In this document: piece by piece, positions 14,600-16,250 of the stretch
Numbering within the stretch: the first letter of the stretch is position 1
Layout of the letters: the number at the start of each line of letters is the position of its first letter
NCBI RefSeq assembly: GCF_902713615.1
Contig: NC_052156.1
Coordinates: forward strand, 133,300,407 to 133,364,406
Source: Scyliorhinus canicula
Lineage: Eukaryota
Direction of reading: 5' to 3'
Length of the DNA stretch: 64,000 nt
Made by a program: the position numbers and the translations under genes
The notes under the pieces: generated by a model
Seen by the model: the letters and a program-made list of their open reading frames with translations, nothing else
Database searches by the model: none
What the model was told of the DNA's origin: nothing

Positions 14600-16250
14600 C
14601 AAATAAAGGCCACAAACCTCAGCAGGCTAGTCACTTTACTGTGTTCTGTATTTTACTGTGTTCCCAATCGACTGAGCACTGGCAGTGAGTATGTATTGTC
14701 ACTGTGATAAGCAGAGGAAAGAAAAGGGATAATCCTGGTATGATATGTCTGAGACACCTGTATCAGTTCCAGGCTCTGGTTCTTAAGCATGGGAAAGATC
14801 TTGCCAAAGGAACATCTCAGACACCCATTTCTTGTCCTTCTTGCCTTGTTCAGAACACTTGGCCTCAAATAATTCTATTCTTAGGTTAGCATCTATGGGA
14901 CTTTTCATTTGTTGCAAAAATGAGAAAATTGCTGCACTTATTGTTAATATCAAAATTATGGAAATACTTTTGCCTGTTTTGCAGATCTAACCAAAATAAT
15001 AAGCACCCACTGTAACTATAATTCAGGAAAGCAAACCTCTGTCCTGTGCATAATGTTGATCTATTAGCTGTTCCATTTTCATCCTGTTTCAAAGCTGCCA
15101 TTTGGAACTCATCTTAAAGCAACAACCTCTGAACACAGTAATGAATCAACTTATCCACTAAATTCCAAATAAGTTACAAGTCTAATTGCTGAAATGATAA
15201 AATTAAAGCTCTAGCCATTGTGTTCTGAAGAAACAAAAGGGAAAATGCTGGAAAATCTCAGCAAGTCTGGCAGCATCTGTGGGGAGAGAAAAGAGCTAAC
15301 GTTTAGAGTCCGATAACTCTTTGTCAAAGCTAACAGACAGAGAAAGTGGGAAATATTTATACTGTGGAGTGAGAATGAAAGATGAGTCATAGCCACATAA
15401 ACCCAGGGAAACAGGGTGCTCATGGCCACAGATATCATGGGGAAAGAGTGTTAATGGCAGTCCCCAGAGAGGACAAAAGATGTGAAAGGTCAAACAGCAG
15501 GGAAACTAACATCAGAGGATGAACTGTGGGTGTGGGGGGAGGGGAAGGGGCAAGCAAAGAGGAGAAAGGTGGATAAGATTGGGGGGGGGGGGGGGGTAAA
15601 TTAAATGTATATTAAGAAAGAAAGAAATGGTAAAAGACAGTTAAAATGAAATGAAAACAAATAGGTCGAAGTGGGGCTGATCATCTGAAGTTGTTGAATT
15701 TGATGTTCAGGCCGGAAGGCTGTAGTGTGCCTAACCGGAAGATGAGATGTTGTTCCTCCAGTTTGCGTTGCGCTTCACTGGAACATTTTGAATCCTCACA
15801 GTCAGTTTTGATCAACTCGACTGGAGATGAACAAAACATACTGTAAACGCTGAAGGGGAGTGGATATGCAGTTGCTCACCATACACAATTGATGGTTCAA
15901 GAAATAGCTAATAGTGCAGAACCTCAGTTACTCAAAGCGTGTGAATGAATGTCCCCAAAATTACTGAAAGCACATAAAATTGGAGAGGATAGCTTTGCAG
16001 GAAGTTCTGGAAGTAATGAGCTGCAGAATTAATTACATAGGATTGAAGAGATCAGCTACAGCAATACAAATAAGTCAACTTTAATAATCTTGTTGCACGA
16101 GAAAAGATCCACATGTAAATACTGGTATTATATTCCGTTCCAGAGAAAGTTCAACTGAAAGTCTTCAGTTTAATATAAATACAAGCACTGTAATCAGTTT
16201 GAACATTACTGTCAATTTATCATTGTGAAAATATCAATATATGTGGATGC
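14600..16250 (+). pseudogene. ZBED4: Decayed ZBED4 (domesticated hAT transposase): BED3, BED4, start of the catalytic region and C-terminus, with stops, frameshifts, deletions and a Penelope insertion
   Basis: Collinear matches to human ZBED4 from memory. FPID*ALAVSMYCHC/ISRGKKRDNPGMICLRHLY vs [36 protein letters not shown] (14660-14765). SKLWKYF/ADLTKIISTHC vs SKLWNHF..ADSTKVVCLHC (14950-15013). [15 protein letters not shown] vs [17 protein letters not shown] (15167-15217). VQNL..KACE*MSPK vs VQNL..[11 protein letters not shown] (15915-15960). EHYCQFIIVKI vs EHFEKLIFLKV (16201-16233). Position and strand match human ZBED4 between BRD1 and ALG12. Confidence 0.88.
15231..15787 (-). mobile_element. 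Penelope-like retroelement, 5'-truncated (GIY-YIG C-terminus plus terminal repeat)
   Basis: 15785 to 15681 encodes CSSEAQRKLEEQHLIFRLGTLQPSGLNIKFNNFR*, a typical Penelope endonuclease end. Terminal motif aaatgctggaaaatctcagcaagtctggcagcatctg and a decayed hammerhead at about 15295-15330. Confidence 0.85.

What the first reader, a model, noticed from the sequence alone, without database searches (positions are those of the whole stretch)
14600..16250. Fossil ZBED4: decayed domesticated hAT transposase at its syntenic position
Between BRD1 (minus) and ALG12 (minus), on the plus strand, exactly where bony vertebrates carry ZBED4, there is no long ORF. There is instead a collinear chain of ZBED4 peptides: BED3 (YCHC-ISRGKK...CLRHLY), BED4 (SKLWKYF..ADLTK..HC), [18 protein letters not shown]..SPK and the C-terminal EH..F..VK. 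They are broken by in-frame stops one substitution away from the human residue (TAA for K, TAG for Q, TGA for R), frameshifts and large deletions. Inference: ZBED4 was already at this locus in the jawed-vertebrate ancestor and was later lost in this cartilaginous-fish lineage. Gene annotators would miss it.
Basis: partly seen in the sequence, partly recalled or inferred. Interest (0 to 1): 0.85.

Follow-up and report, generated by a model that had tools for sequence, protein, structure and literature searches.

The report
Decayed ZBED4 gene relic
Between BRD1 and ALG12, where bony vertebrates keep the transposon-derived gene ZBED4, this genome holds only a single-copy, stop-riddled remnant of it (two zinc fingers and the start of the transposase core); a related species carries the same wreck, so this is an ordinary lineage-specific gene loss.

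Summary
The core of the finding holds. Window 14,626-15,229 (+) is a real, collinear relic of ZBED4. It contains BED finger 3, BED finger 4, the linker and the first block of the hAT catalytic domain (…[10 protein letters not shown].L*P).

- **Match strength.** A frameshift-aware alignment of chicken ZBED4 scores 128 there. The next best score anywhere in the 64 kb, either strand, is 68. Shuffle p is about 1e-8, and about 1e-5 for the second finger.
- **Specificity.** The ZBED1 counterpart scores only background over the fingers and first catalytic block, and ZBED1, ZBED6 and active hAT rows do not resemble the catalytic block by eye. The two fingers map one-to-one to BED3 and BED4.
- **Copy number.** The relic is single copy. 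The SINE (13.8-14.1 kb) and the repeat insert (about 15,230-15,787) are high copy.
- **Assembly check.** DNA contigs of the same species reproduce the lesions covered (14,447-14,797 and 14,723-15,257).
- **Age.** A relative about 5% diverged shares four stops and one frameshift. It still has BED3 in frame and the next ZBED4 block (DNVGF…), so decay began before their split.

Not supported: the peptides downstream of the repeat (VQNL, CE*..SPK, EH..F..VK) are present but score no better than background. No BED1 or BED2 is detectable.

Not tested: an intact copy elsewhere in the genome, other cartilaginous fishes, and the taxon itself. The scan has not reported this relic on other DNA.

The parts
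14626..14790 (+). Relic of ZBED4 BED finger 3. It reads ..CVLYF..ID-TGA(14,673)-..YCHC, then a 2-bp deletion after 14,702 (specific to this species), then (V)ISRGKKRDNPGMICLRHLYQFQ..VLK.
   Evidence: Frames are shown. The score is 78 against shuffles of 30.5 +/- 5.6 (max 56, p about 1e-5). In the relative it is in one frame and scores best with mammalian BED3: 109, against BED4 95, BED2 73 and BED1 54.
14950..15090 (+). Relic of ZBED4 BED finger 4. It reads SKLWKYF, then a +1 frameshift near 14,972, then CFADLTKIISTHC..SGKQTSVL.., TAG at 15,065, ..FHFH.
   Evidence: The ZBED4 rows of Hayward Fig S2 read [43 protein letters not shown]. BED4 scores 73 here against BED3 49, BED2 41 and BED1 35. 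An X-joined read-through gives Pfam zf-BED as the only hit, at E=0.032, below the family cut-off.
15091..15229 (+). Linker plus the first block of the hAT-derived catalytic domain: ..YPLNSK-TAA(15,170)[16 protein letters not shown](15,212)-PLCSE.
   Evidence: ZBED4 has [25 protein letters not shown]. I count 47 of 60 nucleotides identical in that block. By eye ZBED1, ZBED6 and active hAT rows differ completely there. The whole 14,900-15,231 stretch scores 122 against 34.7 +/- 6.1 in 1000 shuffles (Gumbel p about 1e-8).
15230..15787 (.). High-copy repeat inserted into the relic, replacing ZBED4-derived sequence that the related species still has.
   Evidence: Word depth is 1e4-1e5, against 2-6 in the flanks. 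A partial copy lies at 36,481-36,530. In the relative the contig continues after 15,229 with a DNVGF(T)(K)L block of ZBED4, and it has about 293 nt where this species has about 555.
15788..16250 (+). ZBED4 origin is possible but not demonstrable.
   Evidence: Frames are shown. Scores are not above background at protein level or DNA level. There is no Pfam hit. It is orthologous to the relative's contig at about 5% divergence.
13800..14110 (.). SINE-like high-copy insertion upstream of the relic, in the space where the N-terminal half of ZBED4 would have lain.
   Evidence: Word depth reaches 1e6. There are about 25 further copies or fragments in the window. No BED1 or BED2 is detectable upstream.
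3610..5010 (-). Flanking gene: first large coding exon of a BRPF-family gene (BRD1 by synteny).
   Evidence: Pfam finds EPL1 plus PHD/PZP domains. The PDB hits are BRPF1 and BRD1 fragments.
28048..39229 (-). Flanking gene: exons of an Alg9-like mannosyltransferase (ALG12 by synteny and N-terminal sequence). A CRELD2-like gene starts at about 40.7 kb (+).
   Evidence: Pfam Glyco_transf_22 matches 28,048-28,284 and 30,889-31,152. ORFs are listed. Assigning the N-terminus at 38,936-39,229 to ALG12, and the CRELD2 call (Pfam found no family for its ORFs), rest on my own recollection of the human proteins.

Best explanation
This is a unitary pseudogene: the orthologue of ZBED4 left to decay in place. 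ZBED4 is a domesticated Ac-type hAT transposase with four BED zinc fingers.

What survives recognisably is about 600 bp: BED3, BED4, the linker and the first catalytic-domain block.

It is disabled many times over:
- nonsense substitutions (TGA 14,673; TAG 15,065; TAA 15,170; TAG 15,212);
- small frameshifting indels;
- loss of zinc ligands;
- a high-copy repeat inserted at about 15,230, with loss of the adjoining coding sequence;
- disappearance of the N-terminal half (BED1, BED2) and of any recognisable C-terminal two-thirds.

Four stops and one frameshift are shared with a relative about 5% diverged, so inactivation predates their split. Other lesions are species-specific, which shows continuing neutral decay. 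It most likely does nothing now.

Shown: homology, ZBED4 specificity, collinearity, single-copy state, the lesions in the stretches covered by DNA contigs and by the relative's contig, and sharing with a second species.

Inferred: orthology (from synteny), loss of function, and neutrality.
For: - **Whole-window scan.** The ZBED4 query scores 128 at 14,950-15,231 (+). The next best score on either strand is 68 and the reversed query reaches 66. The ZBED1 counterpart reaches 60 at most and not at the locus.
- **Shuffle tests.** z = 14 and p about 1e-8 for BED4 plus the catalytic start; p about 1e-5 for the upstream finger.
- **Alignment.** 45 of 104 aligned residues are identical (its last 15 or so codons run into the repeat and are spurious).
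- **Fingers.** Only two BED-like places exist in the window, both on + and 300 bp apart. They map to BED3 and BED4 respectively (using contig L001).
- **Published alignment.** The codon alignment of Hayward 2013 shows that the matching blocks are ZBED4-specific.
- **Depth and contigs.** The relic has depth 2-6 while the repeats have 1e4-1e6. Same-species DNA contigs are identical over 14,447-14,797 and 14,723-15,257.
- **Relative.** Its contig carries the same stops and frameshift, has an in-frame BED3, and has the next ZBED4 block.
- **Synteny.**
Against: - No single piece is significant alone.
- The reconstructed BED3 gets no Pfam hit, and BED4 is below Pfam's cut-off.
- Only about 15% of a 1,171-aa ZBED4 (length from memory) is recognisable, and nothing downstream of the insert can be shown to be ZBED4.
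- Orthology rests on position alone; no tree was built.
- The Gumbel p-values are extrapolations beyond 1000 shuffles.
- The queries were translated by eye from a paper's supplement.
- The relative's sequence was rebuilt from a difference table, not read directly.
- An RNA library holds two short low-depth contigs over the relic, so faint transcription is not excluded.
Confidence: 0.88

Rival explanations
1. The relic is a dead copy of a mobile ZBED4-like hAT transposon, or a duplicated or retro-copied fragment of a ZBED4 gene that is intact elsewhere. On this reading it landed between BRD1 and ALG12 by chance, so no gene was lost.
For: - hAT elements are abundant in vertebrate genomes.
- The scan notes another domesticated hAT gene with two BED fingers beside MRPS12 in this genome.
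- I could not search the rest of the genome.
Against: - It sits in the exact syntenic slot and orientation of ZBED4, tail to tail with ALG12.
- Its depth is single copy and it has no second copy in the window.
- The BED3-BED4-catalytic order is that of the multi-finger ZBED4, whereas active hATs have one BED (Hayward 2013).
- The ZBED1 counterpart does not score above background, and ZBED1, ZBED6 and active hAT rows look unlike the relic in the catalytic block.
Confidence: 0.07
2. The similarity is a chance chain of short peptides picked by eye across frames in AT-rich intergenic DNA.
For: - Individual pieces have no significant hit anywhere.
- The downstream peptides behave exactly like chance.
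Against: - An unbiased scan of both strands of the whole window puts the one outlier (128 against 68 or less) at this place.
- None of 1000 dinucleotide shuffles comes near it.
- Two independent ZBED4 sources, chicken rows and a mammalian contig, agree.
- The less decayed copy in the relative scores higher (95-142) and extends into the next ZBED4 block.
Confidence: 0.02
3. The locus is not dead. A truncated product, a non-coding transcript, or a regulatory element for BRD1 or ALG12 is retained from the old gene.
For: - Two short contigs in a library labelled RNA cover 14,602-14,874 and 14,992-15,133.
- One 'RNA?' run covers the whole interval.
Against: - That 'RNA?' run covers intergenic DNA evenly at low depth, like DNA carry-over.
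- A third of an oligo-dT RNA run gave no read, though the organism's presence in that run was not verified.
- The longest ORF is 61 aa without the zinc ligands.
- Divergence from the relative is 5%, with many indels inside the fingers, and indels are polymorphic within the species. Both fit neutral drift.
Confidence: 0.03

Closest known systems
ZBED4 of bony vertebrates (domesticated Ac-type hAT transposase; Hayward et al. 2013, PMC3606216)
   Same: - It occupies the same genomic slot next to ALG12 and has the same orientation.
- BED3 and BED4 come in the same order.
- The sequence has ZBED4-specific blocks: SKLW..F.C.AD.TK.I..HC, CVISRGKK...CL.RHLY, and HP..[17 protein letters not shown].
- In the relative the DNVGFNRLL block is also present.
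   Different: - It has no open frame.
- Only two of the four fingers are detectable.
- The catalytic core and the dimerisation domain are not detectable.
- It is interrupted by repeats.
ZBED1, ZBED6/ZBEDX and active hAT elements (hobo, Hermes, Ac-like)
   Same: They share the general BED-finger pattern and hAT ancestry.
   Different: - In the scan the ZBED1 counterpart reaches background only (60 at most).
- By eye their sequences in the catalytic-start block are unrelated to the relic (ZBED1 ELTAAVLGLICEGLYP, ZBED6 HISQAIIQMIVEDMHP).
- They have one or two fingers and sit at other loci.
Unitary pseudogenes left at the ancestral locus after lineage-specific gene loss (my example from general knowledge: GULO in primates)
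   Same: It is a single-copy, syntenic, multiply disabled remnant, and closely related species share its lesions.
   Different: The lost gene here is itself a domesticated transposase. Absence of a functional paralogue has not been checked.

Membership tests
ZBED4 orthologue | Lies beside ALG12 (between BRD1 and ALG12), on the strand opposite to ALG12 | tested here: met
   BRPF-type exon at 3,610-5,010 (-), Glyco_transf_22 exons from 28 kb (-), and the relic on +. The rule comes from Hayward 2013, table.
ZBED4 orthologue | ZBED4-specific sequence in the last BED finger and the first catalytic block, distinct from ZBED1, ZBED6 and active hATs | tested here: met
   Score 128 against a background of 68 or less, with ZBED1 at 60 or less. 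Shuffle p is about 1e-8.
ZBED4 orthologue | Four BED fingers in series | tested here: not met
   Only two finger relics, BED3 and BED4, score above background. Nothing matches BED1 or BED2 upstream. This is expected for a decayed copy.
ZBED4 orthologue | hAT catalytic core (TLNEG..CFSHT.., SKWNTS..) and C-terminal hAT dimerisation domain | tested here: inconclusive
   Core blocks up to ..SVCHALK are not above background. No ZBED4 C-terminus was available to test, and Pfam finds nothing.
ZBED4 orthologue | Groups with ZBED4 in a phylogeny | not tested
   No tree was built. Only pairwise scores against BED1-4, ZBED1 and ZBED6 were obtained.
Unitary pseudogene | Disabling mutations that are real, not assembly errors | tested here: met
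   Same-species DNA contigs are identical over 14,447-14,797 and 14,723-15,257. The same four stops and one frameshift are in a second species.
Unitary pseudogene | Single copy at the ancestral locus | tested here: met
   Word depth is 2-6, like the unique flanks, against 1e4-1e6 for the repeats. It is unique in the window.
Unitary pseudogene | No functional copy elsewhere in the genome | not testable with these tools
   No tool searches this genome. A scan note reports another two-BED hAT-derived gene beside MRPS12, of unknown relation.
Mobile hAT element | Many genomic copies, terminal inverted repeats, 8-bp target duplication | tested here: not met
   Depth is single copy. Inverted repeats and target duplications were not looked for.

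The most novel reading that the evidence does not exclude
ZBED4 would have been present at the BRD1-ALG12 locus in the common ancestor of cartilaginous and bony vertebrates, then lost across a whole shark clade rather than in one or two species. ZBED4 is a cone and Müller-cell protein in the human retina (PMC7471704, PMC7786948), so the loss might track the reduction of cone-based vision in these fishes. That would make them natural ZBED4 knockouts.
Probability: 0.1. Interest if true: 0.6.

Novelty: new member of a known kind. Interest (0 to 1): 0.42.

Why it matters
- The reviews in this library describe ZBED4 as present 'in bony vertebrates' (PMC7786948), and Hayward 2013 examined no cartilaginous fish.
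- If the genome is a shark's, a relic at the same locus is direct positional evidence that the domestication predates the split of cartilaginous and bony vertebrates. It also shows that this otherwise universally retained gene is dispensable in at least one lineage.
- It is a clean example of a domesticated transposase being lost again.
- It is also a gene that standard annotation will not report.
- The practical weight is modest. Lineage-specific gene losses are common, and the ancient origin had already been inferred.

Tried and rejected
- **Piece-by-piece searches** all gave nothing or spurious results. These were Pfam on nine stop-free pieces, PDB, phmmer of 14,689-14,886 against 1.8e9 representatives (which returned only ankyrin and other repeat proteins, inspected), and word-index searches with a piece and with an X-joined read-through.
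- **Pfam on X-joined fingers:** BED4 was weak (E=0.032) and BED3 gave nothing.
- **Obtaining a full-length ZBED4 failed.** The protein index only returns hits near the query's length. I obtained three Logan fragments and one 2.5-kb mammalian contig with BED1-4. Its P/S-rich linkers gave high background on the CpG island, so only the finger segments were used.
- **Downstream half:** four penalty sets, an extended query and a DNA-level alignment were all at background.
- **Expression:** RNA evidence was uninformative.
- **Taxon:** organism names are coded, and a literature search for the SINE sequence found nothing.
- **A weak BED-like stretch** near 16,890-16,990 (..CAEILRHRLKFH..) scores 42-50 with all four fingers. 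That is within background, so I rejected it.

Full report
**Setting**

The window carries three flanking genes (ORFs):
- a BRPF-family first coding exon at 3,610-5,010 (-), with EPL1 plus PHD/PZP domains; its PDB hits are BRPF1 and BRD1;
- a CpG-rich stretch at about 9.2-10.8 kb;
- exons of an Alg9-like mannosyltransferase on the minus strand from 28 to 39 kb (Glyco_transf_22);
- a CRELD2-like gene on the plus strand from 40.7 kb.

This is the BRD1-[ZBED4]-ALG12-CRELD2 arrangement. The CRELD2 label and the ALG12 N-terminus rest on my recollection of the human proteins. Hayward et al. 2013 state that every ZBED4 orthologue they examined, from mammals to teleosts, lies in the intergenic region beside ALG12 (PMC3606216). 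They examined no cartilaginous fish.

**Is the observation there?**

Yes, literally. The plus strand of 14.6-16.25 kb has no ORF longer than 61 aa, and the quoted peptides are present in shifting frames.

Taken one at a time the pieces mean nothing:
- no Pfam family;
- no PDB relative;
- a full phmmer search of 1.8 billion representatives with the longest piece returned only repeat proteins;
- the word index found nothing.

An X-joined reading of the second finger gives Pfam zf-BED as its only hit, but at E=0.032, below the family's cut-off. The first finger gives nothing.

**Getting real ZBED4 sequence**

The codon alignment in Hayward's Figure S2 is held as text. I read the ZBED4, ZBED1, ZBED6 and active-hAT rows for the last BED finger and parts of the catalytic domain and translated them by eye.

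ZBED4 reads as follows:
- ..[20 protein letters not shown][ML][28 protein letters not shown]..;
- ..[27 protein letters not shown][IV]GFNRLLEYL..;
- and later [57 protein letters not shown]...SKWNTSFHMLERLIEQKRA...

The relic has these matches:
- SKLWKYF then CFADLTKIISTHC;
- [18 protein letters not shown];
- [20 protein letters not shown].

In the [16 protein letters not shown] block I count 47 of 60 nucleotides identical to mammalian rows. The two stops are TAA for AAA and TAG for CAG. In the same columns ZBED1 (ELTAAVLGLICEGLYP), ZBED6 (HISQAIIQMIVEDMHP) and hobo, Hermes and Ac-like elements are unrelated.

**Statistics**

I wrote a frameshift-aware local aligner of protein against DNA: BLOSUM62, stop -2, frameshift -8, affine gaps. 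I ran the 119-aa chicken ZBED4 segment against both strands of all 64 kb.
- The top score is 128, on the plus strand at 14,950 to about 15,231.
- The next best anywhere is 68, and the reversed query reaches 66.
- The equivalent ZBED1 segment reaches 60 and not at this place.
- The alignment has 45 identities in 104 aligned positions. Its last 15 or so codons run into the repeat and are spurious.

Against 1000 dinucleotide-preserving shuffles:
- 14,900-15,231 scores 122 against 34.7 +/- 6.1 (max 67), z = 14, Gumbel p about 1e-8;
- the upstream finger (14,560-14,900) scores 78 against 30.5 +/- 5.6 (max 56), p about 1e-5.

The BED-finger query finds exactly two places above background in the window, both on the plus strand and 300 bp apart.

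**Which fingers?**

My last protein search, with the chicken segment, returned three Logan fragments. One lies on a 2.5-kb mammalian contig, L001, that carries BED1 to BED4. Using its four fingers as queries:
- The downstream relic matches BED4: 73, against 49 for BED3, 41 for BED2 and 35 for BED1.
- The upstream relic matches BED3 best in the less decayed relative: 109, against 95, 73 and 54. The signature is CVISRGKK.D...CL.RHLY..H.
- In this species BED3 and BED4 score alike on the upstream relic (76 and 77), so the assignment rests on the relative.

The order BED3-BED4-catalytic start is that of ZBED4. No BED1 or BED2 is detectable upstream. A SINE sits at 13.8-14.1 kb.

**Copy number, assembly and a second species**

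Sequencing runs of the same species (organism A) and of a relative (organism B) hold the stretch.
- Laid on 11.0-17.0 kb, the relic has word depth 2-6 like the unique flanks.
- 13.8-14.2 kb and 15.2-15.8 kb have depths of 1e4-1e6.
- So the relic is single copy, and it is interrupted by a high-copy repeat at about 15,230-15,787.
- Within the window the relic halves are unique. The SINE has about 25 further copies or fragments, and the insert has a partial copy at 36.5 kb.
- DNA contigs of organism A match with no difference over 14,447-14,797 (X6) and 14,723-15,257 and 15,864-16,446 (X3).
- One individual has 4-bp and 12-bp deletions at 15,861 and 16,267, which looks like neutral polymorphism.

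Organism B's 2,463-nt contig aligns to 14,055-15,223 and 15,782-16,432 at about 5% divergence. I applied its listed differences to rebuild its copy. This gives three results.
- B has the same TGA (14,673), TAG (15,065), TAA (15,170) and TAG (15,212), and the same frameshift inside BED4.
- B lacks A's 2-bp deletion after 14,702, so BED3 reads in one frame (..YCHCVISRGKKRDNPGICLRHLYQFH..). B also keeps the final His that A has changed to Gln.
- After 15,229 B does not enter the repeat. It continues with sequence that translates, in frame, to NNVGFTKL, against ZBED4 DNVGFNRL.

B has about 293 nt where A has about 555. B's copy scores higher than A's (95-109 and 142). The gene was therefore already dead in the common ancestor of A and B. 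Each lineage has since added its own damage. In A that includes the repeat insertion, with loss of coding sequence that B still holds.

**What is not supported**

By eye they can be laid on MVQNLLS and [11 protein letters not shown], with TGA opposite R.
- The region scores no better than a quarter to a third of random window bins under four penalty sets, also with longer queries.
- A DNA-level alignment to three ZBED4 codon blocks scores 13, against a window mean of 11 +/- 1.6 and a maximum of 19.
- The ZBED4 C-terminus was not available. The stored supplement is cut and no protein searches remained, so EH..F..VK is untested. Pfam sees nothing there.
- The demonstrable relic is 14,626-15,229.

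**Expression**

This was not settled.
- A run guessed to be RNA covers the whole interval evenly at low depth, like DNA carry-over.
- Another holds two read-sized contigs over the relic.
- One third of an oligo-dT run gave no read, but the organism's presence in that run was not shown.

**Comparison with what is known**

- ZBED4 is described as a gene of bony vertebrates (PMC7786948). It has four BED fingers and arose by domestication in jawed-vertebrate ancestors (PMC3606216).
- No paper in the library joins ZBED4 with sharks or reports a ZBED4 pseudogene.
- The relic meets the positional and sequence criteria for ZBED4. As expected of a wreck, it fails those for finger number, catalytic core and open frame.
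- It fails the one criterion of a mobile hAT that I tested, copy number; inverted repeats and target duplications were not checked.
- It is a new instance of a familiar thing: a unitary pseudogene left by lineage-specific gene loss.

**Caveats**

- I could not verify the taxon, because names are coded. A search for the SINE sequence in papers found nothing.
- I could not search the rest of the genome.
- Earlier notes of this scan mention another domesticated, intron-bearing hAT gene with two BED fingers beside MRPS12 in the same genome. Its relation to ZBED4 is unknown.
- The scan has not reported this relic on other DNA.

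Noticed in passing
window 16,890-16,990 (+): A weak BED-like stretch (..CCAEILRHRLKFHPCTH..) scores 42-50 with all four ZBED4 fingers. That is within the window's background (maximum 55-63), so it is probably chance.
   Followed up: partly
window 20,434-20,997 (-): A 188-aa ORF contains a CCHC zinc-knuckle motif (..KCFHCNKLGHVKSQ..). It looks like a retroelement gag remnant between the relic and ALG12. Pfam gave no hit at E of 0.01 or less.
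   Followed up: partly
window 33,980-34,500 (+): ORFs here carry reverse-transcriptase-like motifs (..IDAEKAFDRVEWKYL..). This suggests a LINE fragment inside an ALG12 intron, in a GC-rich and strongly AT-skewed stretch (32-36 kb).
   Followed up: no
window 15,861 and 16,267: One individual (run X2) carries a 4-bp and a 12-bp deletion relative to the assembly. These are indel polymorphisms within the species in the DNA downstream of the relic.
   Followed up: no
locus L001 (Logan contig SRR16086813_123596), 779-2,516: This mammalian ZBED4 contig reads BED1, BED2-3 and BED4 in three different frames and was called as three genes. The cause is either contig errors or a disrupted ZBED4 copy in that sample.
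   Followed up: no
same genome, another piece (scan notes s1-236520, s1-236548): The scan notes a domesticated, intron-bearing, catalytically dead hAT gene with two BED fingers that shares a promoter with MRPS12. Its relation to ZBED4 or ZBEDX is unknown.
   Followed up: no
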